From Neoconidiobolus thromboides FSU 785 (taxonomy: Eukaryota; Fungi; Entomophthoromycota): DNA of 49,417 bases. Numbering within the stretch: the stretch's first letter is position 1; each line of letters starts with the position of its first letter. The DNA lies in assembly GCA_025603075.1 (NCBI GenBank), contig MU626404.1, positions 1 through 49,417 of the forward strand, in the 5' to 3' direction. The notes under the pieces are model-generated. The model had not been told where the DNA came from. It searched no databases and worked only from the letters and a program-made list of their open reading frames with translations. Both the position numbers and the translations under genes were made by a program. Shown in pieces: positions 24,327-49,417 of the stretch.

Positions 24327-25742
24327 AATAAATTTTTATTCCATTAATTATTGAATGGTATATAATTAAGTTTATTTGATCAAGTTATTATTGAAGATTG
24401 AGTAATTTGGATAAAAACTGATAGTGAAAATGAATTAAGTTTAATATGGGTTGGGTGTAGTTTAAGCCTTACTTTAATCAAGTTTTATTTGATTGGTGGT
24501 TGCTTAAATCATCTTATTGGTTCTTTTTTTCAAAAAATGCCATCATCGGCTTTCAAGTTTTCATTATTTTTAATAATAATTTTATATAATTTTATATAAT
24601 TTTATATTGAATAAGTTCACTTGTTTAATATATTAATAATATTATTTAAGCTATTTTTATTGATAGCATTTTTAATTTCATTTATTAATGCTTGAGTTAC
24701 AATTTATCAATTATTTTTCATGAACTAATGATAAATAAAATGTTTGAGGGCAAAGTGGAAATATTTTAATAAAATACTATTGTTTGAGTTTGAAATTTCT
24801 TCATTAAATAAAAATTAGATTCAAAATTAAAATGATGCATTAATAAAAATCTCTATTCTAACAAAGAAAATAAAAATAAAATATGGGTTTATTCTTTCTT
24901 ATTCTTATTAGCATAATTAAAGTCCATAGTAATAAAATCAAAATATTCATACTATTTTATTAATATTAATATTAATATTAATATTAATATTATTTATATC
25001 ATTATTATCTATAGTGTTATTTATAGTGTTATTTATAATGTTTATTGTTGTTATTGTTACTATCATGTTTATATTATTATTATTATTAATATTAAGTTTT
25101 TCTATTTAAAATTCAATTAAACTCTATCTAGAATAATTAACCCCCGATCTTAACAATATTATAATTTCAATTAAGTGGCTGAACAATAATCAACCCTTTA
25201 TTTTTTCTGTTATCAATTTTTAACCGTAACAATAATAAAAATAGCTCGATTTAACTTGTGGCTTAAAAATCTATTTGGGAGTTTATTTTCTACTTTTATT
25301 TTGCCACTTTTCATCTATTTTTTTTGACTATTTCTCGATAGTAAGAAATATGGCACTTATTTTTAATATCAATAATCAATTGATAAACTAAACTAACTAA
25401 ATCAATCTAAAGTCAATATAACGTAATAATGATTAATTAATTTATAATTGATATGGAAGAGACAGGTGATGCTATCAATTTCTCAAGTGATGGAAATTTC
25501 TAAATGAATAACGTTATTTAATTTAGAGTTTAAATTGTTTTTAATATGAATTCAAACTTCATTTTAAGAAAATCAAACTTCTATTTGAAACTAAATAAAA
25601 AAGTGCAATTAACTAGTATTTTGAAGTTTTATTTTGAATTAATGTAAAAGATAAAGTTATTGGGTTAATTTTTGAAAATATTAATTGAATATTCAATTTC
25701 GATAACTCTTTTATTTGAACATCAATTATGATTTTAACATAT

Positions 25743-25839
25743 GGGGATGTGTTTTTGTGTTTAAGAATTTTATAACAATCTTTCTGTTCAAATAGTGCTT
25801 AAAAGATAGAAAAAGTGATAAAGCCAAAAAAACATCCCC
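25743..25839 (-). mobile_element. MITE copy 8, TSD ATAT/ATAT
   Basis: GGGGATG...CATCCCC. Confidence 0.9.
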
Positions 25840-26433
25840 ATATTCAATTATTATAAATATCAAAATGTAACTATTAGATTAATTTTATTTTAAAAAGAAT
25901 ATTTTTAAATAAATTAAATAAATAAGTTTTTAACGTAGTTAGTTACTAATAATTGTTTTAAAGTTGGCAAAATATTATTAATACTAAATTATTTTTTGTA
26001 TGAGATCTTATGGAATTTTATAAGTTTAGTAATAAATAATATATTAAATTAGAATTAACTTTCGTTTATTTTTAAATTAGATCCTTAGTTTTACAATTTA
26101 TTTATTATTAATATATATATCAATAATTTAAAATAAATAAAGATAAATTGTTAAACTAATAATAAGTTCTTTTTTATATATGAGCAAAAGTAATCAAATT
26201 TGAAATAGTATAAATTTATTTTTATTATTATTACTAAAAACAATAAACAAATATTGAATTATTTTAAATAAAAAAATAATAGCATTATTTAAATTATATT
26301 TAAAAGTTTTATTATTTTTTAAAGTACTTAATTAATTATGTTAAAAAGTATTTTGAATATTATCTATATTAATAAAACAACAGGTCTAAATACTATGTTG
26401 TTTTAGCTTAAAAATGAATCTTAATTATTAAAT

Positions 26434-26525
26434 GAGGATGTGTTTTTTTGTTTAAGAATTTTACTAACAATTTTCCCACTCAAATAGTGCTTAAGAAAAA
26501 GCAATGAAATCAAAAAAACACCCCT
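26434..26525 (-). mobile_element. MITE copy 9, TSD AAAT/AAAT
   Basis: GAGGATG...CACCCCT. Confidence 0.85.
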
Positions 26526-26649
26526 AAATATCTATTTAACTTTCTATACTTATGAGAAAAGAGTAATTTATTAAACTTTGAATGTTTATATATAACGAAT
26601 CGTTTTCTCATTGTATTTTTTCAAAAAAATAACTTTTACGCTATATAAT

Positions 26650-26742
26650 GAGGCTGTTCCTTTTGGCTTTGTCACTTTTTATTAAGCGCTATTTGAACAG
26701 AAACATTGTTAGTAAAATTCTTAAATACAAAAATACATCCCC
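26650..26742 (+). mobile_element. MITE copy 10
   Basis: GAGGCTG...CATCCCC. Confidence 0.85.
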
Positions 26743-27244
26743 ATATTTTAAAATGAATATAAAGTATAATTTGTTAAATATCTTTTAGATTTTAAAGCAA
26801 AAATGTCAGTGCTTTCAAAAATTTAACGAAAACTAATAATTGATTTTTAATATTACAACATAACTATTAAGTTACTATAGATTATAGTAACATATACTTT
26901 GAAATCAAACTATGACTAACAATTAAATAAAAAAGATGTTGGTATTAACTTTAATTCTAAATTTAGTAGATTACATAGTGGCATCTTTGAAGTTGTATAT
27001 TTGAACACCTTGTTTTTGTATTTGACCTTTTCATTTTTTTATAGAACTATATTTAACTTTAATTCGTTAATTTGGAATAATTAACTTTTTAGACCAATTG
27101 AATTCCTTATTATTTAAAACATAGAACATTATTAATGAAATCAATTAAAAGTTAAAATAACTAATCTATTGATTTAGTTTACAATGGGCGGTGAATTATG
27201 TACTATATATACAATGAGTATACCCAGTACATGCCTTACAAATT

Positions 27245-28033
27245 ATGAGTGAGTTAAATTTTATTAAAAGTGAATCTATATCTCCAAAGCAAAAGGAGAG
27301 GGTAGTACTGAGTATGGCACAAAGATTAGAAATTGTAAATCTAGGCGAGCAACATGGATTATCTCATCAAGAGATAGCCACTCAATTTAATGTAGGAAGA
27401 AGTACGGTGACAAAGATACTTCTAAATAAAGAAAAAATTAAAAGGATAAGTAAAGGGGTTTCAAATGATTTAAGGAAAAGAATACGAACTAGTGAATTTG
27501 ATGAGCTTGAAAGAAGGTTAGCAGTTTGGTGTACTAAAGATGCTATTATTAATGATAAAGGCATATTAGAATTAACTTCGGAGCATGACAGCTCTAAAAT
27601 TGAAGAAAAAGCTCAAGAGCTTGCTGTTGAATTAAAATTGTCAAACTTTAGTCCAAATAGTAGATGGTTAGTTAAATTTCGTAGGAAATTTAAACTTGGG
27701 TTTAAGAACATTGTTAAAAGTAAAGAGGATAATAATCAATATGTAAATCAGAACATATATAATCAAATTGAGACTATTGGGTTCCAAAATTCACTCTTGT
27801 TTAATTCTAATTCTTCTGGCTTTAATAATGAATTCTATGACTATAGGAATAATTTGGATTACAGCTCAGTTCTCCTTAACTTTAACAATAACCTTTGGCA
27901 TAATAATTATCGTACTTCTAGTCTTGATGATATTTTTAATTATAGCAACATAAATGATTGCAACTATACTCAACCATATGTGAATGAATTTTATAATTTG
28001 TTCACTGATAATAATGATTTATCAAATTATTGA
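27245..28033 (+). CDS. CENP-B/pogo-type double-HTH DNA-binding protein, paralog 1 (262 aa, Asn-rich tail, no DDE)
   Basis: LSMAQRLEIV..SHQEIATQFNVGRSTVTKI (CENP-B_N/psq HTH); LERRLAVW..KAQELA..F..NSRWLVKFRRKF (Tc5-type HTH). Confidence 0.85.
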   Translation: MSELNFIKSESISPKQKERVVLSMAQRLEIVNLGEQHGLSHQEIATQFNVGRSTVTKILLNKEKIKRISKGVSNDLRKRIRTSEFDELERRLAVWCTKDAIINDKGILELTSEHDSSKIEEKAQELAVELKLSNFSPNSRWLVKFRRKFKLGFKNIVKSKEDNNQYVNQNIYNQIETIGFQNSLLFNSNSSGFNNEFYDYRNNLDYSSVLLNFNNNLWHNNYRTSSLDDIFNYSNINDCNYTQPYVNEFYNLFTDNNDLSNY

Positions 28034-28310
28034 TTTAATTTAATTAGCTATAAAGTTATAAGTCATTATAATAGCCTATTATTAAATTAATACGTAGCAA
28101 GTCTTTTATGTCAATATTTACTTTTTATCTCTGTGCGATTACTTTTTGAGCTTTAGTTACTCTTCGATTTTAATTGAAAACCAACTTTCTGTACATTTCT
28201 ATCACTTTGACCTCTACTTATAAGTATATCTTTAAAATTTCAAGGATATAAACCAACCGAATATTTAAATGAAAATAAATTTAAATACAATAGTTCTAAT
28301 TTCAATAAAT

Positions 28311-28409
28311 GGGGCTGTTTTTTTTTGGCTTCATCACTTTTTCATTCTTTAAGCACTATTTGAGTGAAAAATTCGTTAGTGAAATCCTTAAACATAAAAA
28401 TACATCCTC
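28311..28409 (+). mobile_element. MITE copy 11, TSD AAAT/AAAT
   Basis: GGGGCTG...CATCCTC. Confidence 0.88.
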
Positions 28410-29838
28410 AAATATTGCTTTGGTTTTTAGAATATTATAAAGTAATAATTATTTTAAAAGTAAAACTTCTTCAACTAGTTTGTGACAATACTCTTATGAA
28501 TAATCTTTTATCATCTATATATTAAATGCAGCTATGTGGATCCATTATAACTAAATCTGATACATTATGATAAATTATTTAGTCTTTGGGAATACCAACA
28601 TTTATTGAATTTTATATTTGATATCTTACATAACATTTTGACAACGTATCTACTTTTGACCAAAACAATTTGCTTTTGTATAAACGTCAAGATCCTTTCA
28701 ATGAATCTATTTTACTTATACCACAAAAAATTATATAGTTAAAATTTCAAGTGCTTTTTTTAATTTTATAACTTCCATTCTATTTTATCAATGGAAACCT
28801 ATTAAATATTGACGTTTTAAAACTTAGAATTCCCTTAAAAACTAGAATCCTTTAACAAATAGTCCAAATTAGATTGCTTTGTTACTAATTTAATATAAAC
28901 ATAATATAGATATTTTAATTCTGTATTTGTTAGATACAAAAATAGGAAAAATCTTTATGATTAAACTCATCAAATACAAAATAAAAATGCCCATCTTATG
29001 TTTAAATCAAACCAGTAGTATCTGAATTTTGAATTTTAAGTGTCATTTTCCTTTTTTGATTTAGTAGAATAAGTTATATTAAATGTTTTAAATTATATTA
29101 TATTACTAAAAAATAAAATTTAAATTAACTGAAGCCTAGAATATTAGGATAATATAAAGCTAAATTTAGTAAATTACTTTTTGAATTTTGAAACAATGAC
29201 ATGTTTTATTTCGTAATATAAAATTAATGATTTGGAAAGCATGAGATAAATAGAACTAAATTTAGTAAGTTTTAACCTCATGGTTTTTATACTTATTAAA
29301 GATCTTAGCTATTACTCAGTATCTCAATGATTCTACAGCAATATCAAAGGTAAGCTAGATTGGTTTATAAGATTTCGCCGTTTTCATTCTCAAATGAGCC
29401 CTATAAAATAACTTTAATTAGTTTTTGAACTCTACACTAGAATCATTTCGTGACTCATAAAATTGGCCTTATTGAATTAAAAACTGCGCATTTTTTTAAA
29501 CGCAGCAATTTTGTTTTTTTGAAGCTTATGTAAGAAAAATGAATACTTTTCTTGGAAATATAAACAAAATAGTATGTATATATTTGGGATTTTTATGTAA
29601 TTTAATTATAAAATATTCCCTTAACTGACCTTACATCCCATAATTTTAACAGTGTTTATTTTAGAGTAAAAAAAGTTGACCAAGAATAAAATTCTACTGC
29701 GTAAAATAGGGAACAAAATGAAAAATAGCAAAAATTAAATGATGATATAGTTAAAAGTTCTTACAGTGAGAATGTGGCGTTTTAATAAAAGGTTGATAAA
29801 AAAGTATATAAGCATTAAATTCAACAAAATCTCAACTT

Positions 29839-30834
29839 ATGGCTGAAAGTGAAAATTTTATTGATAAATCTAAAAAAGTGGGGAGGACAACTTTGAGTAT
29901 GAATGAGAAGCTTAAAATTATAGAATTAGCAGGTAAACATACACATCAAGAAATCGCAAATCAATTTAACGTTGGACGTAGTACAGTTACTAAAATTTTA
30001 TCGAAAAAGGATAAAATTATTGATTCAAGCAAGGGTATTTGTATTGATTTGAGAAGAAGAGTTCGGTCCAATAGCTTTGGTGACATTGAGAAAAAAGTAT
30101 TAGAGTGGTGCGCCAAAGATGCAAAATTGGACGATCAAGGAACTTTAACTTTAAACACAAGATATGACAGCGAAAAAATAATTAAAAAAGCAAAAGAAAT
30201 AGCAAACGAGATGAATCAGCAGCATTTTTTTGCAGATAATGTATGGCTAATGAAATTTAGGCGGAGATTTAGGCTCAACTTTGATATTAAAAAGCTTAAT
30301 GATTCTGAGAGCTTTGAAAATAACTCCGAGCCTAGTGTTTGTAACCAAAACCAAACCTCTATGTTTAATGGCGATGAATTTAATTATGATAGTAATGGTA
30401 ATTGGTTTGAGGCAAACGACATGGGGCTTGACTTTTTATATAACCACAATAATGCAGTTTATAACAATTTATTGAATCACGTTCAAAGTAATGTAAGTAA
30501 TATTAATATTCAGGATAATGAACTTGGCCTAAATTCGTATAGCTATAGTAATCAATGCCTTGAAAATAATGCTAAAAGCCCATATATAATGGACTCGGCT
30601 ATCCCATCCCCATTTTTAACTCCCTTGAGTCAATCTTCGCAAAGCATTGAAAGCTTTTTACTTCAACAAAACGACCTTTATGCTTTAGATGGTTTTAATC
30701 CAATGGGCAACGATAATGAGTTCAATCAATCAACATCATCTAATACCCTTTTTCCTTACCCTATATCCTTTTCTACTAACCAACTAAATCCCAAACCAGA
30801 AGATTGGACTTCAAACCAACATAATAATCTGTAA
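29839..30834 (+). CDS. CENP-B/pogo-type double-HTH protein, paralog 2 (331 aa, N/S/Q-rich acidic tail)
   Basis: LSMNEKLKII..HQEIANQFNVGRSTVTKI; IEKKVLEW..KAKEIA..FFADNVWLMKFRRRF. Confidence 0.85.
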   Translation: MAESENFIDKSKKVGRTTLSMNEKLKIIELAGKHTHQEIANQFNVGRSTVTKILSKKDKIIDSSKGICIDLRRRVRSNSFGDIEKKVLEWCAKDAKLDDQGTLTLNTRYDSEKIIKKAKEIANEMNQQHFFADNVWLMKFRRRFRLNFDIKKLNDSESFENNSEPSVCNQNQTSMFNGDEFNYDSNGNWFEANDMGLDFLYNHNNAVYNNLLNHVQSNVSNINIQDNELGLNSYSYSNQCLENNAKSPYIMDSAIPSPFLTPLSQSSQSIESFLLQQNDLYALDGFNPMGNDNEFNQSTSSNTLFPYPISFSTNQLNPKPEDWTSNQHNNL

Positions 30835-32413
30835 AATAAGATATAACTATATCTTCCTTAAAAATAATAAAATAATAAAATAATAGTAATATATATATTG
30901 CATTATTATAATGAGTTCTATTATAGCCTTCTGAGCTATGATGAAAACTTTAGTTATCCTTGTTTGAGCTCCATTTTTCGACCCTACCTAAATTGAGTAG
31001 TGTTTCAATACAAAAAGAAACATCTTATAATGTATAAAGGTGAATAAATATGATAGAAAAATCAAACATAACAATCAACTATACAAACAAAGTGGTACCC
31101 TAAAAAAATCTTAACTACTCAATTGCTCTAAGGCTAAAAATTTGGACAAATTTTTTTTGGTCACTTATTCACTTATTAAACTCAATTAAGTCATATAAAG
31201 TTCCTCACTAATATGATGAACTTGTTGAAAAATTTCCAAGTGTAACACTTTAAATGATTTGATTGGGGGATTGAGTTTCAAATTTCTTGAGAAAAATTAA
31301 CTGCAGTACTTAACCTATCTAATTTATTTTGGAATTACTAGTCTATAGACTTTATCTCTTGATAGATATCTTCACATATAAGAAGGTGTTAAATTCGTTA
31401 CAAAACTTGTGAACATATTTAAATCGAGTATTAGTAAAATTAGTAATGGATTCTAATAAAAGGATCATAAGCTATTGGGAATAAAGACGGTAGAATTAAC
31501 TCATATTTATGAATCAGAGTAACATTTAAAGAACTCTTAAGAACAAACTAAATTTCTTTTATTGTAAAAATAGTTTTTCAGCCTAAAAGTATAATTTCAA
31601 AAATGTAATTTCTTAATTTAACCTACTTTCTAATAAGATTCTTAGTTTCATATTAACTATGATTAAAATTAAAATTGAAGTCATTACGATCATTATAGTA
31701 AATATTAGGATAGTTTAGTGAGTTTTGTTAAAAATTTCCAAAATTTGGATTTCATACTACCATATTTCAGTCATAAGTGGTTATTGATGAAATAAAGTGA
31801 TAAATTATATTAAAAATAATGTTTATAAGGGATCCAGTGGGCACAATCTGTTCAAAAAAAGCTTTACGAAAGTTATTGAATAACAATATTGAGCTTTAAG
31901 GATAAATGTTTCACCTGAAACATTAAAGTCCAGAGCATTCATTCTATTTATAATTAGCTAATAAACCTTTATTAAAGTTTAATGACTGAGTTATAGATAT
32001 TTTATAAATATAATGCATTGGTATAGAGTTGAATATTTTCTAAAACTGCTACAATTTAAAAGAAATATATCTTCAACGTAGTTGTTAGTAAAGAATATCT
32101 ATATTTGAATCATTTCAACACACTATACTTATTAGTATATTTTATTCAATTGTATATAACATATTTATATTGATAAACTAATATATAAAATTCATAATTA
32201 TAGCGAGGTTTCACTTTGAGATGTTTTGAATTAATTGTCCATATAATATATTAAAAACTTTGATACATTATGAGAACTTAAAAATGTATATAAATTAAGG
32301 AATACTAAAAGGCATTTAAAACATTCTTTATTCGATAGCTTAAACTTTGACTTTAATTCCCTTGAATAAGGCGTTGTTACCTTGGTGATCAAGTTTTTAC
32401 ACAGAATCTTACA

Positions 32414-33346
32414 ATGACAAAGCGGTTTGCTTTGAGTATATCCCAGAAATTGGAAGTAATAAAATTACACGAAGATGGAATGCTCCACAAAGACATAGCT
32501 AAACATTTCAATGTAGGTAGGAGTACTGTAACAAAGATATTATTAAAAAAGGATGAGATAACACAATTATCCAAGGGAATCCAGATTGATTTAAGGGAAA
32601 AAGTCAGGAAGCATAAGTTTGCTAATATTGAGCAAAAAGTAATGGAATGGTGCTCCTACGATTTAATTAAGAGCCATAAAGGTGATTTGTTATTTCCGTT
32701 AAACTACAATAGCGATAAAATAAAGGAAAAGGCTAAGGAGATTGCGGCTGGAATAGGAGAAAATAATTTTATAGCTGACAATAAGTGGCTAGCTAGGTTT
32801 CGTAGAAGATTTAAATTAAACTTTGTAATCAAAAGAAGGTGTAAAGCCCAGAAGTTTATAGGTAAAGCCAATGGTATTGAGTCTGAACATTTAGGCTATT
32901 GTGGTAGCTTGCCAAATCTCAAAAGTTCATTACTTGATGATTGGAATTATATTTTAGACAATGAAATTTTATTAAATAGTTTAAATTCTAAATTTAGTAA
33001 CAATGTCAACAACGATTCTGTGAGAGCATTTTATAATAAAGACCATAATAAAAACTACAAGCCAGACAACACGATTTTGAACATTAACAGCTCGAATTTT
33101 ATCTCAAGCGGTTCCAATTGTATCCCTTGTCCATATCAAAGCTATACGCCTATCGCGACAAACTCTATAAATGGGTTGCTACTTAATGGAATGCCTTTTT
33201 ATACTGATATCTACCCAAGTATCATTAATAATGTTATTCCATGTCAAAATACATCTTTTTACAAAGTGTCAATTTTTGGAAACTCTTCATTTGATCACAA
33301 CATTATTCAAACTCAAATGAAACTTATGGAGAATTCAATAGTGTAA
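32414..33346 (+). CDS. CENP-B/pogo-type double-HTH protein, paralog 3 (310 aa)
   Basis: LSISQKLEVI..HKDIAKHFNVGRSTVTKI; IEQKVMEW..KAKEIA..FIADNKWLARFRRRF. Confidence 0.85.
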   Translation: MTKRFALSISQKLEVIKLHEDGMLHKDIAKHFNVGRSTVTKILLKKDEITQLSKGIQIDLREKVRKHKFANIEQKVMEWCSYDLIKSHKGDLLFPLNYNSDKIKEKAKEIAAGIGENNFIADNKWLARFRRRFKLNFVIKRRCKAQKFIGKANGIESEHLGYCGSLPNLKSSLLDDWNYILDNEILLNSLNSKFSNNVNNDSVRAFYNKDHNKNYKPDNTILNINSSNFISSGSNCIPCPYQSYTPIATNSINGLLLNGMPFYTDIYPSIINNVIPCQNTSFYKVSIFGNSSFDHNIIQTQMKLMENSIV

Positions 33347-33854
33347 ATCCAATAATTCCATAATTCAAAGATATGATTGCTTGATATAATCAGCTTATTA
33401 TATATTATTTTGGATTAGTACAATATTAGTAAATGTAAATTTAGCCCTAAAGTTTTTTATCCAGAAATTTTGGTTTGTAAATATTAAATAAAAATGTTAT
33501 GTACAGCTTTAGATTTATACTTTTTAATTTTAATATTGCGAAATCTTCTTGACAGGCTCCTAAATAAATAACTTGTTGAATAAATATAATAAACTGGGGG
33601 GTACAACGATTGGTTTAAAGCAAATACTTATAAAGTAAAGAATGAAAATAGGAAAATACAACTTCATTCAAATATCTACCAAGTTTCTCTAGAATAGTAT
33701 AAAAATGGATTTATTTCTTATTTCACTTTTATCACCATTTACTCACACTTTTTAAGCTATGTCACTTCTCGGTAACACGAGAATTTAAGGATATTAAACA
33801 TAATTGTTATAAAAACTCGATTTTTTTGTCCCCTATAACTATCTTAAATTATAT

Positions 33855-33952
33855 GGTGATGTTTTTTTTGATTTCATTATTTTCCCATTTTTTAAGCGCT
33901 ATTTGAGTAGAAAGAGTATTAGTAAAATTCTCAAATACAAAAATACATCCCC
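33855..33952 (+). mobile_element. MITE copy 12, TSD ATAT/ATAT
   Basis: GGTGATG...CATCCCC. Confidence 0.9.
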
Positions 33953-34055
33953 ATATATTAGAAGCTAATCAAAATTGATCTTTATATCTATACAATTCTT
34001 TTGTTAAGTTTTGCTTTTAGTAAAATCATAAGAGACTATAGTAAGAAATAAATAT

Positions 34056-34151
34056 GGGAGTGTTTTTTTGGTTTCATTACTTTTTCTATCTTTTACACTA
34101 TTTAAGCGGAAAAATTGCTAGTAAAATTCTTAAACAAAAAAACACATCCTC
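34056..34151 (+). mobile_element. MITE copy 13, TSD ATAT/ATAT
   Basis: GGGAGTG...CATCCTC. Confidence 0.87.
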
Positions 34152-34554
34152 ATATGTATAATTTCAAATAGTTAAATCAGGTAATCTAATAAAAATTATT
34201 TCAATAAGTACCACTAAAAAACCCTATCTCGTAGAGCATAAAGTATAGCACTCCAAAACAAGCGTTTTGCTGTAAAATGCTAAACAAGTTTCTATAGCTA
34301 CATAATGAGATTTAATAAATTATAAATTTATTATAATAGCCAATTGAAATAAGGCTGACATATTATTGCTATACTAAATTTATTGTAGATAAAAGGAAGG
34401 ATCAATTAAGAATTAATTAAGTAATTCAAAGCATTGAAGTAAATAAGATCATCATAATGGTCTAAATAAAAAATATTTTAATCATCAAGGGTATTTAAAA
34501 AGGTATCGCTATTGGATAGAGAATTCCAATAAGCTCAACCGTAGCTGTTATCGT

Positions 34555-35163
34555 TCAAAAAATATAATCATCAAATTGGATATCTATATCATTATCGATT
34601 TCATTGTAGATTTGATAATCAGTTAGAGAAGGAAGAGTAAAATCATCAGGTACATTGCTTTTAATAATGTTAGTATCTTTGATAGTCAAAGAGCTTAATT
34701 GTTTTTTGGGTATTTTAAATTTTAATTTAAACTTCCTTCGAAGCTTGGATAGCCAAAGGGTATCTGCAATAAAATGAGATTGATTTAGCTCATTTGCTAT
34801 TTTTTGAGCTTTCATAATAATTTTATCACTATCGTAATCTGGAGCTAATTTAAGAAATCCTTGTTCATCTTTTTCTGCGTCCTTGGTGCACCATTCAATT
34901 ACTCTTTTTTCAAGTATGTTGAACTCATTTTTTCTAACACGCTTCCTTAAATCATTTTCAACTCCTTCACTCAATGTAAGTAGTCTTTCTTTATTAGTAA
35001 TGATTTTTGATACTGTACTTCTTCCTATATTAAACATATTTGAAATGTATTGATTTGTGCTTCCAGCTTTGTGTAGTCTTATTATTTCTAGCTTCTGGGT
35101 CATATCCAATACATTCCTTTCTTTATGTTTTAGTTCAGTACCTTGATTGCTAGTATTAGGCAT
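34555..35163 (-). CDS. CENP-B/pogo-type double-HTH protein, paralog 4 (202 aa, short acidic-aromatic tail)
   Basis: LDMTQKLEII..NQYISNMFNIGRSTVSKI; LEKRVIEW..KAQKIA..FIADTLWLSKLRRKF. Confidence 0.85.
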   Translation of the reverse strand: MPNTSNQGTELKHKERNVLDMTQKLEIIRLHKAGSTNQYISNMFNIGRSTVSKIITNKERLLTLSEGVENDLRKRVRKNEFNILEKRVIEWCTKDAEKDEQGFLKLAPDYDSDKIIMKAQKIANELNQSHFIADTLWLSKLRRKFKLKFKIPKKQLSSLTIKDTNIIKSNVPDDFTLPSLTDYQIYNEIDNDIDIQFDDYIF

Positions 35164-35636
35164 TGATTTTATTTTTTTAAATCTATTATTGTTTTAAACT
35201 ATATATATATTAATGGGAGGCTATTTTATAATAGTCAAATGCTCTAATCTTATAATAAAAATTATGAACACATATACTAATAGTATTATATTTGGTATTT
35301 GATATGTTTATAATATTATCTTATGATGCTTCATCCTTTCTGATAACTTCAATTCTTTATTAGAAGCTTCTTTTCTATAAAGAATAATTATAAAAGTTTT
35401 GATTCGCTTATCATTTTGTTTTTTTTGATAAAACTCAATAGCGGTGTAACATAATGAATTGATTATAAGCCACATTTACTATAACTAATCAATATAGTCA
35501 ATCTGTTGAGGACACAGTGACGTTCTCTCAAATTTCGTCATCAGAGCTAATAACAAATATTCAAAACTTTATTTAAATTTGTCTATATTAAATGTAATAT
35601 TTAACATTATTAATTCTAATTGCTTTAGAACGATAT

Positions 35637-35735
35637 GGGGATGTTTTTTTTGGCTTCATTATTTTTTCTATCTTTTAAGCACTATTTGAGTGGAAAAATT
35701 GTTAGTAAAATTCTCAAATACAAAAACACATCTCC
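35637..35735 (+). mobile_element. MITE copy 14, TSD ATAT/ATAT
   Basis: GGGGATG...CATCTCC. Confidence 0.9.
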
Positions 35736-36930
35736 ATATATAGATTTAAATCAATTGTTTAAGCTATTTATAACTAAATGATTATACTATGGTTGCTATA
35801 AAAAATGCTCTTGTATAGTAGTGATAATTATTGCCATAAGAGCAAAAACATATATACAAATTCTGATATTCTTGAACATTAAATCAAAAGGATATCAGAA
35901 ATAATTAAATATCAACAATTATTTTGAATTTACATTGTTACCATGAAAAGCTGATATTCTATACTACCAGAAAAATTAATACTTCTAGCCAATCAAATAT
36001 AAAGAACTACTATTAGGTCAAAACTCGAATTTATTGATTTTATAGTTTCTATAAAGAAAACTAGTGATCAAAAATGATACTTTTTATAATATAAAAAAGG
36101 TAAAATAGTCATTTGTTTTAAAATAGGACCACTTTAAACTATAGAAATTAGCGAGAGGGGCAGAAGAATTAAGCTCAAAGCCAAAGTCTATCTCGTATTT
36201 CTATAGTAACATGTCTACGAATTTTGCGTTCTCTTCTTCAAATGGCAAACCTGTAGCTCAAGTTAAAACCCGAGTTAAAAATATGGAATATTCTTTTTTG
36301 AAGAAGTGTATAATACATGGGAAATATAGCCGTTGTTTGTTTATTGGGAAATTACAAGGACTGGAAAAAAGAATGCGAAAGAAAAAATAAATGAATTTAT
36401 TTGGAACTATTGTGCTCAAGACAATGCAAATTAATTTGTAATAAACATAAGGTTAAATGGATGTACCAGCCCTAAAAGGTTTATCTTCGAACAAATAACT
36501 CATAAGGCTGAAAAGTATAGTATTAGTGGCCACAACTGACTTCTAGCTTTGATCTGGATTCAAATTACAATCTAGTTGGTTTAAGTTAATCTGAGCCTAC
36601 AAAACAATTTAGTATCTATATGTAATACTTGAGACATATGCTTACAAATTCAAGCTCAACAATACTCAAGTTTATGAAAGAACTTAAATAGTTGCCTAAT
36701 TAACTTAAATAAGATGTATATTAATTTTTTTTCAAAGTTTATATGAAAAAAGTTCTAATCCAATAAATATATGTTAGTGTTTTTTAATACAACTAGTAAA
36801 CTTATATATATGAATTACATATACAATATTTAATAGAACTTTCCATAAGCAAAAAATGTTATAGGTTTTTGTATTTAATCAAATGTTTCAAAAATCTTTG
36901 TGCTAGATTTAAGATAAATATTAAGGCTGT

Positions 36931-37027
36931 GAGGATGTATTTTTATGTTCAAGAATTTTACTAACAAATTTTCCACTCAAATAGCGCTTAAAAAACGGGA
37001 AAATAATGAAACCAAAAAAACAGCCCC
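36931..37027 (-). mobile_element. MITE copy 15, TSD CTGT/CTGT
   Basis: CTGT|GAGGATG...CAGCCCC|CTGT. Confidence 0.9.
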
Positions 37028-37271
37028 CTGTAATATAAAAGTTCGATGATAAAATTATTATCGTTCTGTTTTGGAAATTTAGCATTAATCAAAATTTTTA
37101 TTAATTTAATACTTATGGGCAATACTTTTGTTATAATATAGCGTTAGACTCTGTCAATGGTAATTAGAGTTGGTTTCATGAATCTATATCTCGCAATTAC
37201 TGATGTTTAGTGATTCCTTCAACACTACTATAAATAATCTCCATAAAATGAAATAATTTATGACTAAATGG

Positions 37272-37766
37272 CTATTTAGAATCATGGTATTTAGATACAA
37301 AATCGTCTTTATTTAATATAATATACCTATTTTTTCTATATCTCTTTTCACTCATCTTAAACTTTAGCTTATACTTCCTACGAAATCTAATAAGCCAACT
37401 ATTATCAATAGTCAAATTATTGATGCTTAGCTCTTCTAATAAAGTTTTTGCCTTATTTGCAATAACGTCTCCTGTGATATCCTCATTTAATCTTAGGAAG
37501 CTATCAGTCGTTAATATAGCGCCTTCGGAGCAAAGTTGTAGCAGTCGATTTTCCAGATGGTCATATCCCGTTAACCGAATCCTTTTCCTTAATTTATTAA
37601 ATACACCTTCCTTAAGTAACTTGATTTTATCCTTATTCAAAATGATTTTAGTTACCGTACTTCTCCCAATCTTGAATTGCTCAGCAATAGTTTTATGGGG
37701 AAAACCTTGGTCAGCTTGTTTAATAATTTCTAATTTGGTGGATATATCAATAGCTTTACGGCTCAT
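37272..37766 (-). CDS. CENP-B/pogo-type double-HTH protein, paralog 5 (164 aa, essentially tail-less)
   Basis: IDISTKLEII..HKTIAEQFKIGRSTVTKI; LENRLLQLC..KAKTL..DNSWLIRFRRKY. Confidence 0.82.
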   Translation of the reverse strand: MSRKAIDISTKLEIIKQADQGFPHKTIAEQFKIGRSTVTKIILNKDKIKLLKEGVFNKLRKRIRLTGYDHLENRLLQLCSEGAILTTDSFLRLNEDITGDVIANKAKTLLEELSINNLTIDNSWLIRFRRKYKLKFKMSEKRYRKNRYIILNKDDFVSKYHDSK

Positions 37767-39412
37767 TTTGATTACATCTATGTAAAATAAGCCAATCTTT
37801 TTTAAGCTGATTTTGTATATTAGACTGTTTATATAATGTTAAACTGTTCCTTAATCCTCATGCTTTGAAGTTGTAAATAATATTTCTATTTAGAATATTT
37901 CATACAACCATTGCTAATTTTTACAGAAAATGTTTTCATATTGATGCTTTACTGTCGATATTCATTCCAAAGAACTTCATATAAGTTACTCTAAAACTCA
38001 AAATTATTATTTGGTTATTAAAAATACCTCTTTGATTATGCTTTTTGTTACTTTTCGATAACCCATATTTGCTTTTCATCTTAAATTTTGTAGCTCTTTC
38101 ATTTAACTCTACATAATATATATTATTAAAATGCTTAATATTTTACAAAAGAGAAAAAATGGATAATAAACGAAACTATGTAGAATGCTTATACGCTAAA
38201 GTAACTCCTCTTGATATAATAGTAAAATATTTTAGGGAAATGAAATGTGAATTTTTTGAGGCAGAGTAATTAATTAAAATGAACTTTAGCTATTCACATA
38301 TTGCGAAGTGACTAGTACCATTATTAAATGAATGGACTTTACCTGAGCTATTGCTTTATGTTTCGAGAGGTAGCAAAATTTATCTAAATAAAAAATAGAG
38401 GAGGTACTGATATAGGTAAAAAACCAAAAATGAGGCTCATGTGAAGCCTAAAAAGCAAAGATATAAATAATAGGAACGTTCTAAAACCTGATGATACAAA
38501 TTAATAGGAAAGGGAAAAAGTAAAGACAGTAATTTATTAAGCTAAATCAAATTTAACAGTCAAACCCTTCATATAACTAGAAAAGGAAAATTTAGTTGTT
38601 TATCTTTCCCATAGGGGCACTTAGGGGCTACATATAACTAAAAAAACCATATTATTTAATTCCAACTTAATCTGTCAATTTTAGGAAAAATATCAAACCG
38701 CAATTTTTATAAAATACAAAAACGTTAGCTAAAAAAAGTGAAATTATATCTATAGTTTAGGTTTCGTCATTTGTTCTGTTATTTAAAACTATAGCAAAAG
38801 GTTTTTTGGCTTTAAGTTTATATGGCTTCTGTAATTATTGGGTTATCATATAAGAATATAGCATATAAACTATTCTAAATAGTATATTATCTCCCGCTAT
38901 AATATTACACTTCTTTGAAATATTGAATAATTAATCTAATTAAAAATATATCTCTTTTTAATATATTTTATTCAAGTTTTTTTGAAAAATTGCGTTTAAT
39001 ACAGTTAACACTTTCAATACCATATACTATCATTATTTATACTCAATGTTTGGCCTTTATTTATTTTTTTTGACCCATATAATATATGGTAATTTTTACT
39101 GCTGTCATATCTTCTAAAGGATGGGGATCCTGTAAATATAACAAAGTCATAGTATAAGAAGATATTATATTATCATCTTCAATTGCAGAGACCAATGCCT
39201 TTTCAAATAAACTTTTGATTTGATTTTTGTTTAAATTATACTTTGTAGATTAATTTTTAACAGCAACTTGATTTTAAAATTTGGACTCAATCTTTATTTG
39301 GTTCTTAATTTGGTATATATTAAAAGCAATAGGATCACATATCATAGTTTGGCCGTTTTAAAATGATTAATTTTAATACATAGAAGAACAATATTTCTAT
39401 TTAGAAATAGGC

Positions 39413-39444
39413 TTCAAAGGTAATTCAAAGGTAATTCAAAGGTA
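39413..39444. repeat. 11-bp tandem repeat (TTCAAAGGTAA) x3
   Basis: Read directly; the third unit is one base short. Confidence 0.75.
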
Positions 39445-40334
39445 GTAGTTGATTTAATCTGGCTTTTTTAGTTTTATTCCTTCCAAAAAGGAATACCAAA
39501 CTATTTATAAAATTCAAGAAATCCTACTTAATTATATATATGTTCGGGGTGTTTTTTCTGAATATAAAATTAATTGTGTATGATATTGTAGACAAAAAGA
39601 TCCTGTACGTTTTATTGGTGAAGAAAGCTATTGGATACAAAAGCAAAGAATATTATAAGTAGCATTACATATGATTACAGTCAAAGGCCATTAAAGAATA
39701 TAATGGTTGCGTTCTTATCAGGTTTTTGAACTTTAGTATTTTAGTTATCATTCAAATAATTACATTAGAACAAAACAGGAATCTCAAAGTCCCCCTATTT
39801 TGATTATTTGTACGCAACAAAAGTTAAAATAATACAGCTCAATTGCTAAATTATATAAAATCAGTAGTCAGTCATGTCAGAATCCGATATATAATCACCT
39901 TTAACAATGTTATCATAATATTACACTATTGTTGAGAAATAAAAGGTTTACACAAGTCAGTAATAAAGAAGATCGAATGGGAATAACCATAAATTTATAG
40001 TAACATCTATAAGAACATTTAACGTGCCTAAATGACAATCTAATAGTGATTAAAGTAAAAGAAAAGGTGACCAAATTTAAGGTATTTTATACAAAGTAAT
40101 GTAAAATAATCCTTGGAAGAGAAATTCCTTAATTAAATAAAATATTTTAATCGAAGTGTTTAAATTATTTAAAGCAGGGAATAAAAAACAATGGTTCTTA
40201 TCAATAGCAATACTTTTCTTTACTTGTTATTAATATTTACTCTAATAATTACACATAAAATTTAGGATTTCCAGATATATATAAGCGAAAAGCCAGTACA
40301 AACTTCAAAAGGTTTTAGTTTTTAAAAAATAATT

Positions 40335-41312
40335 ATGTCTCGTAGGTTCGTAGATTTAGATACCAAATTAAATATTATTAAACTAGCCGAAAAGGGATTA
40401 TCACACAAAGACATTGCTAACCATTATGATATTGGAAGGAGTACAGTGACAAATATAGTTTTAAACAAAAGTAAGGTGGAGAATATCAAGGAGGGAGTTT
40501 TCAATAAATTGAGAAAAAGAGTGCGTGCTACAGAATATGATGATTTGGAAAATCGAGTACTTCAATTCTGTACAGAAGGAGCTATACTTATGTCTAATGG
40601 AATACTTAAACTTAGAGATGACATTGATGGTGATATTATTATAAATAAAACAAAAGAGCTACTAAAAACACTAAATAATGATGGTATTGTTATTAATAAT
40701 AACTGGTTAGCTAAGTTTAGAAGAAAGTATAAGCTCGCTTTCAAAATAATCAAAAAAAGAATGGACCCTAAAGATAACTGCATATCCTATGGGGAGTACA
40801 TAATTGAACCTGATGTCTCTAAATATCCTTTAAATAATTACCAGCATAGCTCAAACCTAAGCAATTCATATCCCAATAGCGACTCCTTTAATGACAATCC
40901 AGTGTTACCAATAGTAACATATCCAGAGTTTGTTGGTACAAATGTAACAGGTTCCAATATACATCAAAGCAGTACTGAAATTCATAGAAGATTTAATAGT
41001 CATATATATAAAGACCATATGCCAAACAATTTTACATATGCGAACTCTCTTGGGCTTGTTTCAAATATTGATAATAGTTATAGTGCAGCTAGTTTACTAC
41101 ATCCTAATTACCGGTCTTTCCCGCTAGTAATAACCAGTAAACCAATCCATGTTTTAAATGTTCCGTACAACTATACTAATCTAAGCTCGCCTACTCTTTC
41201 TTTTTCAAATAATTCTTTAGACCAGTTTAATAATCATATAGTTCCTTCAAATTTTACTACTAATGAAGTTTGTAACTACTACTATATAAACACCTCAACC
41301 ACTAGGATTTGA
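40335..41312 (+). CDS. CENP-B/pogo-type double-HTH protein, paralog 6 (325 aa, N/S/P-rich tail)
   Basis: VDLDTKLNII..SHKDIANHYDIGRSTVTNI; LENRVLQFC..KTKEL..NNNWLAKFRRKY. Confidence 0.85.
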   Translation: MSRRFVDLDTKLNIIKLAEKGLSHKDIANHYDIGRSTVTNIVLNKSKVENIKEGVFNKLRKRVRATEYDDLENRVLQFCTEGAILMSNGILKLRDDIDGDIIINKTKELLKTLNNDGIVINNNWLAKFRRKYKLAFKIIKKRMDPKDNCISYGEYIIEPDVSKYPLNNYQHSSNLSNSYPNSDSFNDNPVLPIVTYPEFVGTNVTGSNIHQSSTEIHRRFNSHIYKDHMPNNFTYANSLGLVSNIDNSYSAASLLHPNYRSFPLVITSKPIHVLNVPYNYTNLSSPTLSFSNNSLDQFNNHIVPSNFTTNEVCNYYYINTSTTRI

Positions 41313-41505
41313 TTTTTCGGTTTAATCTTTCATTCTAACTTCGAATTTTACCTACCCTATAGGTACTCTTTCTTTTACTTTATGCTATCTAAAGTTAATT
41401 TTTGTTGAAAAGTTTGAGAGGATAGAATCCTCAAGTAATCAGTCATCTATTGTTTTTAGCTTTAATTTTTCAAAATGAAGTAATTTGTTTTTTATTTAAG
41501 TATAT

Positions 41506-41591
41506 AGGGATGTTTTTTTGATTTCGTTGCTTTTTTCATTTTTTAAGCACTATTTCAGCTGAAAGATTAGTAAAATTCTTAAACAATAAAA
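41506..41591 (+). mobile_element. MITE copy 16 (right end missing)
   Basis: AGGGATG left end and core; no right terminus. Confidence 0.75.
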
Positions 41592-42079
41592 GTCAGAATT
41601 TATCACTAAATTCAGTTACCATAGTCACTATTACATATGTAATACTCTTAAGTTTAATTTCAAGAAGGTTTTATCGATTGAATCCTGTATAATAGACAAC
41701 ATAATGCTTTTTCCCACTTTTTTATACAATCTAGAATAAAAAGAGTATATTTACTACTTCTAATGATAAGGATGAGATAAACATATTTAATTTTGATACT
41801 AAATATTAACTCAATTACAAAGGCTTCTTTATTGAAATACAATTTATTCATTTTCAAAAAATAAATAATAGTAGTATAGCACTAGGGTTTTTTTTTCTGA
41901 TAATTTTTATACTACAATAACATAATACTAGATAAATCACATAAATATTTAATTATTTTTAGTTGTTTATATCTTTATGATTTAGTTGGCATTATAATAT
42001 TTCTAACTTTTGTACAGTTTATTAAAAATAAAATAAAATAAAATAACTTATAACTTTGCTAGTTTTATGACATATATAT

Positions 42080-42174
42080 AGGGATGTTTTTTTTTATTTC
42101 ATTACTTTCCCGTTTTTTAAGCGCTACTTGAGTGGAAAGATTGTTAGTAAAATTGTTAAAAAAAATACATCCCT
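42080..42174 (+). mobile_element. MITE copy 17, TSD ATAT/ATAT
   Basis: AGGGATG...CATCCCT. Confidence 0.9.
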
Positions 42175-43058
42175 ATATGCAATTTTTTTAACTAAGAATT
42201 TTTTTATAATATTTATTTTGATTTGCAGATTGATTTTTCTTGAAAGTTAGTGTGCAATATGATTGGTTAAAACATGGCTTCAATTTTTGATCATTATTAA
42301 GCTGAGATCTCAACAAATGTTATAAAATCAATCAATCTGTAATCCAATTTCAACAATATAAACTAATGATGCTTAACAAACAAACACTGTAATTAACAGC
42401 CGAATAAAGTAAGTGTTTATTCCATAATCTTTTGATATTGATAAGAAATAGGATCTTCATGTTATAGATAGCAATAATTAAAAAGTTATTAGTTATTATG
42501 AAATAATAAGTGTATTTATTAAAAATATAGGAATTTAGTAGTACTTTTGTTTAAACAAAGGTTAAAAGACATAAAATAAAAGCTATATATCAAAAATGAT
42601 TGATCAAATATATTGGTGAGTGCTCAAAAGTTGGAGAACGTAAACTTTTTATTAAAAAATCCTTAATATGTTTGATCCTAATACACTATCACATCAAATA
42701 ACGTTTTGGGTAAATAAAATTTTGAAGTTATAAAAAAATTAATTGAATTTCTTGATTACTTCCAAATATAGTTATACAACTAATAATCATTATAGGCTGT
42801 TACTATTCTATTGCGAGATAATTGTTTGTTCATTTAAAAAATATTTTTTGCTAAAACCAAGTCAAAACGTTAAATTTAGACTATGAAAAAACTAAACAAG
42901 CAAATAACTAGCTCTTAAAACTACTACAAATCAGATCGTAATAGTGTTGTAACAGTCGTAAAGAATAAATAATTCATAAATTCTACAAAACAATATAAAA
43001 ACAAAATCCAAGTCAAAATCATTTTTATTTTTATTTTTATTTTTTTTAAATATTAAGG

Positions 43059-48886: not shown

Positions 48887-49417
48887 TTAGCAAGTACCAC
48901 CAAGGCGAATATCCCAATAAGTAAGATGGTCATCAACACTCAGAAATGGTTCAGTAGAAAGTGAACAAGAAGGATCTTCAATTTGAGAAGTACTGCAAAT
49001 CTTAGCTTGATTATTATGTAGCCACATTTCAACAAAATAATGATTAAAGGACATAGAACGAGGTGGTACATGAGGTACAATATCCTTGTTATTAGTAACT
49101 CTTGTAGATAATAAACTCAATGAATCAAACCAAGTAGCAAAATCGGAATTTCCTACTCTTGGTTGTCCATAGGTGAATAATTGTATATTTCCCCATGAGA
49201 GTTGTTGAGATGCTTGAAGATCAATAGCAGCTAAATTTGCAATTGCACCGCCTAAAGAGTGACCAGTGACAACTAATTTAAAACCTGGATTGTTCTTTAA
49301 TAAATCTTTGACTACAGGTGTATAAACTAAACTAAGTGCATCCCTAGCTTGTTTAAAACCAAGATGAACTTGAACTTTACTATTACCAGAAAACAAATCC
49401 ACTTTATCTACTTTAAC
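48887..49417 (-). CDS. Class 3 lipase (alpha/beta hydrolase), 5' end beyond the window
   Basis: VHLGF lid-adjacent motif, VTGHSLGGAIA nucleophile elbow, TYGQPRVG, RVTNNKDIVPHVP, DHLTY catalytic His. The frame is open to the window edge. Confidence 0.93.
   Translation of the reverse strand, partial: VKVDKVDLFSGNSKVQVHLGFKQARDALSLVYTPVVKDLLKNNPGFKLVVTGHSLGGAIANLAAIDLQASQQLSWGNIQLFTYGQPRVGNSDFATWFDSLSLLSTRVTNNKDIVPHVPPRSMSFNHYFVEMWLHNNQAKICSTSQIEDPSCSLSTEPFLSVDDHLTYWDIRLGGTC

What the first reader, a model, noticed from the sequence alone, without database searches (positions are those of the whole stretch)
27245..41312. Tandem cluster of six transposase-derived (CENP-B/pogo) DNA-binding genes with no catalytic domain
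Seen: six intact, intronless ORFs over 14 kb (orientation + + + - - +), with no other recognisable gene among them. Each has the ~140-aa double-HTH module and no DDE domain, and I saw no terminal inverted repeats around them. Most other genes in the window are intron-rich. Known: pogo transposases are HTH-HTH-DDE, and domesticated forms such as CENP-B, S. pombe Abp1/Cbh1/Cbh2 and yeast Pdc2 keep a DDE-derived region and are not arranged as such arrays. Inference: a pogo DNA-binding module was domesticated once and expanded locally into a cluster of sequence-specific regulators. They could be developmental transcription factors or TE-surveillance factors, conceptually like KRAB-ZNF clusters. 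I do not know of a description of such a cluster in fungi, but I could not search.
Basis: partly seen in the sequence, partly recalled or inferred. Interest (0 to 1): 0.85.

Follow-up and report, generated by a model that had tools for sequence, protein, structure and literature searches.

The report
Clustered transposase-derived DNA-binding gene family
Six neighbouring genes in the insect-pathogenic fungus Neoconidiobolus thromboides encode proteins built from the DNA-gripping part of a pogo "jumping gene" enzyme without its cutting part; they belong to a family of at least 24 such genes that the fungus has kept and multiplied (three of the six are shown to be transcribed), most likely as gene regulators.

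Summary
The six intronless ORFs are at the stated coordinates. All six hit Pfam CENP-B_N above threshold, and four also hit HTH_Tnp_Tc5 above threshold. No DDE remnant or non-MITE inverted repeat is present.

The window is a whole contig of Neoconidiobolus thromboides FSU 785 (Entomophthorales). Its last 357 nt dovetail with MU626464.1, which carries four more family genes, so this is a ten-gene super-cluster.

The family has at least 24 intact members in this genome: a second six-gene cluster, a third smaller one and singletons among housekeeping genes. Every deposited member is annotated "hypothetical protein" and is its own representative at 50% identity. It forms one clade against 70 pogo/Tigger DNA-binding domains, and neighbours are closest kin, which indicates tandem duplication.

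Synonymous sites between paralogs are saturated while the DNA-binding domain is conserved (omega about 0.2 in the youngest pair). The disordered tails stay open far beyond chance. RNA contigs cover ORF2-4 but not the spacers. These are host genes, not decaying transposons.

One caveat: between two near-identical strains, 16 of 19 changes are nonsynonymous.

DBD-only pogo domestication is already known (Drosophila CAG). The clustered multigene expansion in a fungus is the new part. First-stage notes of this scan describe similar genes on other contigs of this genome.

The parts
27245..28033 (+). W1, 262 aa. Double-HTH DNA-binding domain at about aa 18-155, then a disordered N/S/Y-rich tail.
   Evidence: ORF. 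CENP-B_N 31.4 bits, HTH_Tnp_Tc5 26.2 bits. In the AF2 model, residues 18-155 are mostly above pLDDT 90 and residues 162-262 are below 50. The top Foldseek match is 1HLV. The tail stays open with P=1e-4 under shuffling.
29839..30834 (+). W2, 331 aa. The same DNA-binding domain with a 180-aa N/S/Q-rich tail.
   Evidence: RNA contigs cover 29862-32119 in X1 (identical) and 29895-30763 in X2-X4, unspliced.
32414..33346 (+). W3, 310 aa. The best Pfam match of the six.
   Evidence: CENP-B_N 39.7 bits, HTH_Tnp_Tc5 31.7 bits. RNA contigs cover 32209-33307 in X1 and 32326-33495 in X2/X3 and are continuous. A TATA-like motif lies at about 32287-32294.
34555..35163 (-). W4, 202 aa. The only window member with the family's post-domain motif K-S-N-V-P-D-D-F-T-L (aa 168-177).
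   Evidence: The motif is aligned with about 10 other members. RNA contigs cover 34359-35201 in X2/X3 and are continuous.
37272..37766 (-). W5, 164 aa, essentially tail-less. Sister of W6 and arranged head-to-head with it.
   Evidence: The tree gives 98/88.
40335..41312 (+). W6, 325 aa. DNA-binding domain plus a 175-aa tail.
   Evidence: None of 20,000 shuffles left the tail open (P below 5e-5).
49061..49417 (.). Dovetail overlap with the start of N. thromboides contig MU626464.1. It links the six genes to four further family genes.
   Evidence: 100% identity over 357 nt, running from the window's last base to base 1 of the other contig. The further genes are on L002/L005.

Best explanation
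The six ORFs are bona fide host genes of Neoconidiobolus thromboides. They belong to a lineage-specific family of at least 24 intact members. The family descends from one capture of the bipartite CENP-B-type DNA-binding module (CENP-B_N HTH plus Tc5 HTH) of a pogo/Tigger-like transposase, with the DDE catalytic domain lost. It then multiplied mainly by tandem duplication.

Proposed working (inferred). Each protein binds double-stranded DNA sequence-specifically, as CENP-B does. The two three-helix bundles would sit in adjacent major grooves, joined by the conserved basic R-K-R-(I/V)-R linker. The near-invariant G-R-S-T-V-T-K-I recognition helix gives a shared core specificity, and variable positions and the family-specific insertion in the second HTH tune it. 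The unrelated, disordered N/S/Y-rich tails recruit partners, so the paralogs would act as a diversified set of transcription or chromatin regulators. Some tails carry the short motif [KR]-S-N-V-P-[ED]-x-aromatic-x-L. The MU626341.1 paralogs share a tail segment that looks coiled-coil by eye. The tail-less W5 could compete for sites.

Shown here: domain identity and fold, loss of DDE, absence of TIRs, monophyly, tandem kinship, long-term constraint and transcription of three of the six genes.

Inferred: DNA binding itself, the targets, and the regulatory output.
For: Domain and fold:
- Pfam hits.
- The profile matches CENP-B 1-129 across both HTHs (E=3.2e-14).
- In the AF2 model 104 residues have pLDDT of 90 or more, and its only significant Foldseek match is 1HLV (E=1.1e-5, probability 1.00).

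Not a transposon:
- No DDE in the window or in five related loci.
- Inverted repeats are MITE copies only.
- There are no near-identical copies. Every deposited member is its own representative at 50% identity.

Selection:
- Among paralogs pS is about 0.75 (saturated), while pN in the DNA-binding domain is 0.17-0.44.
- In the youngest pair (C2/C3) dS is 0.88 and dN 0.20, so omega is 0.23 in the domain and 0.56 in the tail.
- Tails of 112-181 codons at 26-33% GC have no in-frame stop, against 3-38 stops in the other frames (P of 1e-4 or less).

Expression:
- In three RNA runs of a ~99%-identical organism, contigs cover ORF2, ORF3 and ORF4 with short flanks. Depth is essentially zero in most of the spacers, except at the MITEs.
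- The contigs are continuous, so the genes are intronless.

Promoters: a TATA-like motif lies 35-130 nt upstream of the ATG in nearly all of the 18 members examined.

Family structure. Some members sit singly among housekeeping genes such as PARP, Ca-ATPase, HSP20 and PTR2.
Against: - Between the window strain and organism B, 16 of 19 coding differences in ORF2-4 are nonsynonymous. pN/pS is 1.24. This is compatible with neutrality and rejects omega of 0.3 or less at p about 0.01. Present-day constraint may therefore be weak, or selection may be diversifying.
- No ortholog from a clearly different species was recovered. There is only one distant homolog from a Logan run and one metagenome fragment, so synteny and deep conservation are untested.
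- The run type 'RNA' is the tool's guess. Run X1 also covers 1.3 kb of spacer downstream of ORF2.
- Expression of W1 was not examined, and expression of W5/W6 is only suggested.
- HTH_Tnp_Tc5 is below Pfam threshold in W4 and W6.
- No DNA-binding or target data exist.
Confidence: 0.7

Rival explanations
1. TE-directed binders. The proteins keep the ancestral transposase's ability to recognise transposon ends. They would bind the abundant TA-flanked MITE (or its autonomous partner). This could repress transposition or nucleate silencing, as in KZFP-like surveillance or S. pombe Abp1/Cbh. Alternatively the dispersed MITEs could serve as a ready-made network of binding sites, as with SETMAR.
For: A roughly 118-nt MITE has about 18-nt terminal inverted repeats and TA on both sides, the Tc1/mariner/pogo hallmark. 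It has 17 copies in the window against 0.05 expected. About 10 of these lie in and around the cluster, and five of the six genes have one within 180-500 nt of the stop codon. The family derives from a pogo-type DNA-binding domain. The excess of nonsynonymous change between strains, the tandem amplification and the divergent paralogs fit an arms-race pattern.
Against: MITE copies are 75-89% alike while gene paralogs are saturated at synonymous sites, so the MITE burst is much younger than the family. The MITE also lies at 0.9-1.7 kb and 46-49 kb, away from the cluster, and is excluded from coding DNA, so proximity may be chance. No autonomous element with these TIRs was seen. Some family members sit in ordinary MITE-unrelated neighbourhoods. 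No binding data exist.
Confidence: 0.2
2. Centromere or heterochromatin proteins in the manner of CENP-B, Abp1 and Cbh, binding a repeat to organise chromatin rather than regulating individual genes.
For: The closest solved structure and Pfam families are CENP-B's. Pogo has been recruited repeatedly for this role (PMC4231638).
Against: The proteins lack the DDE-derived central domain and a CENP-B-type C-terminal dimerisation domain. At least 24 divergent paralogs with unrelated tails are hard to reconcile with one structural role. The window shows no satellite array.
Confidence: 0.06
3. Decaying, internally deleted pogo elements whose first ORF happens still to be open.
For: Internal deletion of the DDE region is common in pogo (PMC4231638). 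Strain-level pN/pS is about 1.2. The region is MITE-rich.
Against: There are no TIRs or TSDs around any gene and no DDE relic. No near-identical copies exist. Synonymous sites are saturated, yet 18 of the 18 examined CDSs are intact and the DNA-binding domain is conserved. Tails are open at P of 1e-4 or less. Three of the six genes have discrete transcripts, and family-specific motifs are conserved.
Confidence: 0.04

Closest known systems
Drosophila CAG (CG12346), with the DNA-binding-module domestication route described for cag and CG4570
   Same: It is a pogo-derived host protein of about 225 aa with CENP-B_N + HTH_Tnp_Tc5 and no DDE domain. It is not flanked by TIRs and it is expressed (PMC4231638; PMC13548663). 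This is the same architecture as W1-W6.
   Different: CAG is a single-copy, syntenic gene under strong constraint (dN/dS 0.08 in the paper). Here there are at least 24 paralogs in tandem clusters with unrelated tails and little sign of constraint between strains. It is an independent event in a fungus. CAG was not placed in my trees.
Human CENP-B; S. pombe Abp1/Cbh1/Cbh2; S. cerevisiae Pdc2
   Same: The bipartite DNA-binding domain is homologous (1HLV: E=3.2e-14 by profile, and the top structural match).
   Different: Those proteins keep a DDE-derived central region, and CENP-B has a C-terminal dimerisation domain. They are single or few-copy and are not arrayed.
Autonomous pogo/Tigger/Fot1 transposases
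   Same: The N-terminal DNA-binding module is the same. The nearest database relatives outside the family are Tigger-type proteins, mostly from arthropods and nematodes.
   Different: The family has no DDE_1, no TIR/TSD and no recent copies. It has a family-specific 3+5-residue insertion in HTH2 relative to CENP-B. It forms a separate clade more than 2 substitutions per site from every sampled transposase.
Tandemly amplified, fast-evolving DNA-binding gene clusters (KRAB-ZNF, insect ZAD-ZNF) and transposase-derived factor families (pipsqueak, FAR1/FHY3, MADF, THAP)
   Same: They share local amplification of one DNA-binding fold, with divergent partner-recruiting regions. The transposase-derived families listed also share a transposase origin for the fold.
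   Different: The resemblance is of pattern only (from general knowledge). No KRAB-like or ZAD-like effector domain is present and no target data exist.

Membership tests
CENP-B-type bipartite HTH DNA-binding domain (PF04218 + PF03221) | N-terminal CENP-B_N HTH above the Pfam gathering score | tested here: met
   All six score 22.8-39.7 bits against a cut-off of 21.2.
CENP-B-type bipartite HTH DNA-binding domain (PF04218 + PF03221) | Second HTH (HTH_Tnp_Tc5) above the gathering score | tested here: inconclusive
   W1, W2, W3 and W5 pass (23.2-31.7 bits against 22.2). W4 (13.4) and W6 (18.9) do not. However, the six-sequence profile aligns through HTH2 of 1HLV, and the AF2 model folds it with pLDDT above 90.
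Autonomous pogo/Tigger transposon | DDE_1 catalytic domain | tested here: not met
   There is no Pfam DDE_1 hit. tblastn with eight DDE regions gives a best E of 0.038.
Autonomous pogo/Tigger transposon | Terminal inverted repeats with a TA duplication bracketing the gene | tested here: not met
   Only MITE copies and coding paralogy appear among the inverted repeats.
Domesticated transposase gene (criteria of Feschotte and Pritham as listed in PMC4231638) | Intact coding capacity under functional constraint | tested here: inconclusive
   Long term, the criterion is met: pS is saturated, domain omega is about 0.2, and tails stay open. Short term, between strains, there are 16 N: 3 S changes and pN/pS is 1.24.
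Domesticated transposase gene (criteria of Feschotte and Pritham as listed in PMC4231638) | Orthologs at syntenic positions in other species | not testable with these tools
   Only ~99%-identical transcripts of a coded second organism and one distant homolog on a 1.35-kb Logan contig were found. No related fungal genome could be searched.
Domesticated transposase gene (criteria of Feschotte and Pritham as listed in PMC4231638) | Expression as a discrete host transcript | tested here: met
   ORF2, ORF3 and ORF4 are covered by continuous contigs in four runs, and in X2-X4 depth is essentially zero across most of the spacers. W5/W6 are suggested by word shares. W1 was not examined. The run type is the tool's guess.
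CENP-B / Abp1 / Cbh centromere proteins | DDE-derived central domain and a C-terminal dimerisation region | tested here: not met
   Pfam finds nothing beyond about aa 155. The W1 tail is modelled as disordered.
Drosophila CAG-type DBD-only pogo derivative | Orthology or shared origin with CAG | not tested
   CAG was not available from a tool and was not placed in the trees. Only the architecture is the same.

The most novel reading that the evidence does not exclude
The family is a fungal counterpart of KZFP-type genome surveillance, or of SETMAR-type rewiring. On this reading it is a tandemly amplified, fast-diversifying set of transposase-derived DNA binders. Their targets would be the termini or the conserved core of the genome's abundant TA-flanked MITE, so gene-family growth and MITE spread would be coupled.
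Probability: 0.15. Interest if true: 0.75.

Novelty: new variant of a known kind. Interest (0 to 1): 0.45.

Why it matters
Transposase DNA-binding domains are a recurrent source of regulators, but documented pogo cases are single genes (CENP-B, CAG, Abp1/Cbh). This locus shows one capture amplified to two dozen divergent, probably expressed paralogs in tandem arrays, in an early-diverging insect-pathogenic fungus, all currently annotated as hypothetical.

If the paralogs bind distinct sites, they are a sizeable lineage-specific addition to the regulatory repertoire of Entomophthorales. They would also be a tractable natural experiment in how one DNA-binding fold diversifies. If they bind the co-resident MITE, they would be a rare fungal example of transposase-derived TE control. 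Either way, the family should be named and modelled rather than left as 'hypothetical', or masked as TE in annotation pipelines.

Tried and rejected
1. A word-indexed homolog search with W3 alone returned only itself. With the 23-member alignment it added one member (P0155) and nothing from other named fungi. These searches are capped and word-limited, so absence elsewhere is not shown.
2. DDE remnants were sought by tblastn in the window and five loci. None was found.
3. I looked for TIRs specific to the genes. There are none; all are MITE copies.
4. I asked whether the MU626427.1 and MU626464.1 clusters are recent segmental duplicates. Only the 5'-nucleotidase block (88% nt identity over 2.4 kb) and the small ORF are duplicated. 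The adjacent HTH genes share no nucleotide similarity and are not sisters.
5. A k-mer search for a shared upstream motif in 18 promoters gave nothing convincing beyond TATA-like boxes.
6. I looked for a closest transposase lineage or donor. No outgroup is nearer than about 2.2 substitutions per site. The arthropod bias of the nearest hits is a lead, not evidence of horizontal transfer.
7. Rfam over the cluster gave no match.
8. Pairwise dN/dS for most paralog pairs is undefined because pS is 0.75 or more.
Full report
**What is there**

The window averages about 25% GC. It carries ordinary fungal genes: a P450, an ABC transporter, a RhoGEF, a Zn2Cys6 factor and a GNAT.

They are separated by spacers of 1.2-2.6 kb. 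W3/W4 are tail-to-tail and W5/W6 are head-to-head.

- All six pass Pfam's threshold for CENP-B_N.
- Four also pass for HTH_Tnp_Tc5; W4 and W6 fall below.
- None has DDE_1.

The first ~145 residues align at 35-52% identity with 26 invariant columns. The rest of each protein is unrelated and N/S/Y-rich.

A profile of the six domains matches human CENP-B 1-129 over both HTHs (1HLV, E=3.2e-14). It shows a 3+5-residue insertion in the second HTH.

An AlphaFold2 model of W1 was built on a 23-member family alignment.
- It gives two three-helix bundles at pLDDT mostly above 90.
- It places a small hairpin at the insertion.
- It leaves the tail disordered.
- Its only significant PDB match is the CENP-B-DNA complex.

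**Not a transposon**

- tblastn with the catalytic halves of eight verified pogo transposases finds no DDE relic in the window or in five related loci.
- Every long inverted repeat is either a copy of one MITE or coding similarity between opposite-strand paralogs.

**Whose genome, and how big the family is**

An exhaustive profile search of 1.84 billion representatives gave 3165 hits at E of 0.001 or less.

- The top short, single-domain hits are all 'hypothetical protein' of Neoconidiobolus thromboides FSU 785.
- The window's last 357 nt are 100% identical to the first 357 nt of that assembly's contig MU626464.1, end to end. The window is therefore this genome, and the two contigs abut.
- MU626464.1 carries four more members, one of them absent from the called genes.
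- The six genes are thus part of a ten-gene stretch of about 42 kb. It is interrupted by a small ORF that a first-stage note calls secreted, a GNAT and a lipase.
- MU626427.1 has another six in 27 kb, plus a relic.
- The end of MU626341.1 has two intact members and two degenerate ones.
- At least two members (P0043, P0155) lie singly among housekeeping genes; P0027 also has no called family neighbour. The neighbourhoods of P0031 and P0041 were not fetched.

That makes at least 24 intact members. Outside this genome I found only one distant homolog on a 1.35-kb Logan contig and one soil-metagenome fragment. The next best hits are animal Tigger-type or multi-module proteins.

**Evolution**

In a tree rooted on four pogo transposases the family is one clade (100/99).
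- W5+W6 are sisters (98/88).
- W1-W4 group with the MU626341.1 genes (97/94).
- The other two clusters group together.

Physical neighbours are therefore kin, as expected from tandem duplication.

Against the 70 nearest non-family domains, the 24 members remain one side of a branch (SH-aLRT 92). No outgroup is nearer than about 2.2 substitutions per site.

Nei-Gojobori counts on 18 CDSs, all intact, give the following:
- Median pS is 0.75, which is saturation.
- pN in the DNA-binding domain is 0.17-0.44.
- In the least diverged pair, omega is 0.23 in the domain and 0.56 in the tail.

Tails of 112-181 codons at 26-33% GC contain no in-frame stop, against 3-38 in the other frames (P of 1e-4 or less by shuffling). 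Sequence evolving neutrally for that long would not have stayed open.

The family also shares features that the CENP-B reference lacks or that lie outside the DNA-binding domain:
- the R-K-R-(I/V)-R linker;
- the HTH2 insertion;
- a post-domain motif, [KR]-S-N-V-P-[ED]-x-aromatic-x-L, in about 11 members including W4;
- aromatic C-termini.

**Expression**

Contigs of four public runs were laid on 29500-35400. The tool guesses the run type as RNA.
- In three runs of a second, ~99%-identical organism, contigs cover 29895-30763, 32326-33495 and 34359-35201. These are ORF2, ORF3 and ORF4 with short flanks.
- In those three runs depth is zero or close to it (at most about 5) across most of the spacers, apart from very deep MITE signal.
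- The contigs are continuous, so the genes are unspliced.
- The run identical to the window also covers ORF2 (plus 1.3 kb downstream) and ORF3.
- Word shares of 0.17-0.37 for 37100-41500 in the second organism's runs are what transcription of W5 and/or W6 would give.
- Nearly all of the 18 members examined have a TATA-like box 35-130 nt upstream of the ATG.

**The caveat**

The main-haplotype differences between the window and the second organism are 16 nonsynonymous and 3 synonymous over 2.4 kb.
- pN/pS is 1.24.
- This is compatible with omega = 1 and rejects omega of 0.3 or less at p about 0.01.
- None of the changes hits an invariant column.
- The sample is small and may be within-species polymorphism.

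**Context: the MITE**

A roughly 118-nt MITE occurs 17 times in the window against 0.05 expected.
- It has about 18-nt terminal inverted repeats.
- It has TA on both flanks.
- It has a strongly conserved central core.

About ten copies lie in and around the cluster. They are 75-89% alike, which is far younger than the gene duplications, so they are later arrivals and not part of a mobile unit.

Their TA flanks point to a Tc1/mariner/pogo-type mobiliser. That keeps alive the idea that these pogo-derived binders recognise them, but nothing here tests it.

**Comparison with what is known**

The closest known thing by architecture is Drosophila CAG: 225 aa, the same two domains, no DDE, no TIRs (PMC4231638).

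What I did not find described is such a gene amplified into tandem clusters of two dozen divergent paralogs, or any account of this family in Entomophthorales. The literature tool covers open-access text only.

**Verdict**

- This is a new variant of a known kind: an independent, DBD-only pogo domestication followed by large tandem expansion.
- Function as diversified DNA-binding regulators is the best-supported reading (about 0.7 for host DNA-binding genes). MITE-directed binding is a live minority alternative.

Noticed in passing
window about 25735-25850, 26425-26540, 26642-26755, 28305-28415, 33850-33960, 34050-34157, 35634-35745, 36930-37035, 41500-41600, 42075-42185; also 0.9-1.7 kb and 46.4-48.7 kb: A MITE of about 118 nt has about 18-nt terminal inverted repeats (T-G-G-G-G-A-T-G-T...) and TA on both flanks. 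Its central core (TTTAAGCRCTATTTGAG) is very well conserved. It has 17 copies in the window against 0.05 expected. Its word depth in the RNA runs is in the thousands, so many copies are transcribed genome-wide. None lies between 1.7 and 25.7 kb.
   Followed up: partly
window 49061-49417 and L002 (MU626464.1) 1-357: There is an exact 357-nt end-to-end overlap between two contigs of the assembly, inside a lipase gene. The two contigs can be joined.
   Followed up: yes
L004 14082-16451 vs L005 11324-13719: A 5'-nucleotidase gene (Metallophos + 5_nucleotid_C) and a small upstream ORF are duplicated at 88% nucleotide identity. The copies sit at the ends of two different HTH clusters. The adjacent HTH genes share no nucleotide similarity.
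   Followed up: partly
window 30879-32119: The run identical to the window has one 2281-nt contig that runs from ORF2 through 1.3 kb of ORF-free spacer. The three runs of the other organism have no more than trace depth there. This could be read-through, a non-coding RNA or DNA carry-over. The first 23 letters of that contig do not lie on the window.
   Followed up: no
window 30072-30277 and 30330-30386: The second organism's runs hold a minor ORF2-like contig with 17 differences in 206 nt. One run has a variant with 10 differences in 57 nt (7 nonsynonymous). This points to a recent extra copy or a divergent allele of ORF2 that the window genome lacks.
   Followed up: no
L006 1772-2920 (-) and 9629-10726 (+), 15301-16434 (-): The MU626341.1 members share a conserved tail segment that looks coiled-coil by eye and is absent from the window genes. 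One 382-aa member has lost the first HTH but keeps that tail.
   Followed up: no
proteins P0006, P0007 (ENA assemblies), P0008 (scorpion), P0015 (chironomid): These are proteins from other sources (scorpion, chironomid and unnamed ENA assemblies) that carry three to six tandem copies of the same CENP-B_N + Tc5 module in one polypeptide. They were the best non-family hits of the profile.
   Followed up: no
L009 10001-10715: The gene model for family member P0027 spans 715 nt for 199 aa and does not translate colinearly. This is either an intron gained by a family member or a faulty model.
   Followed up: no
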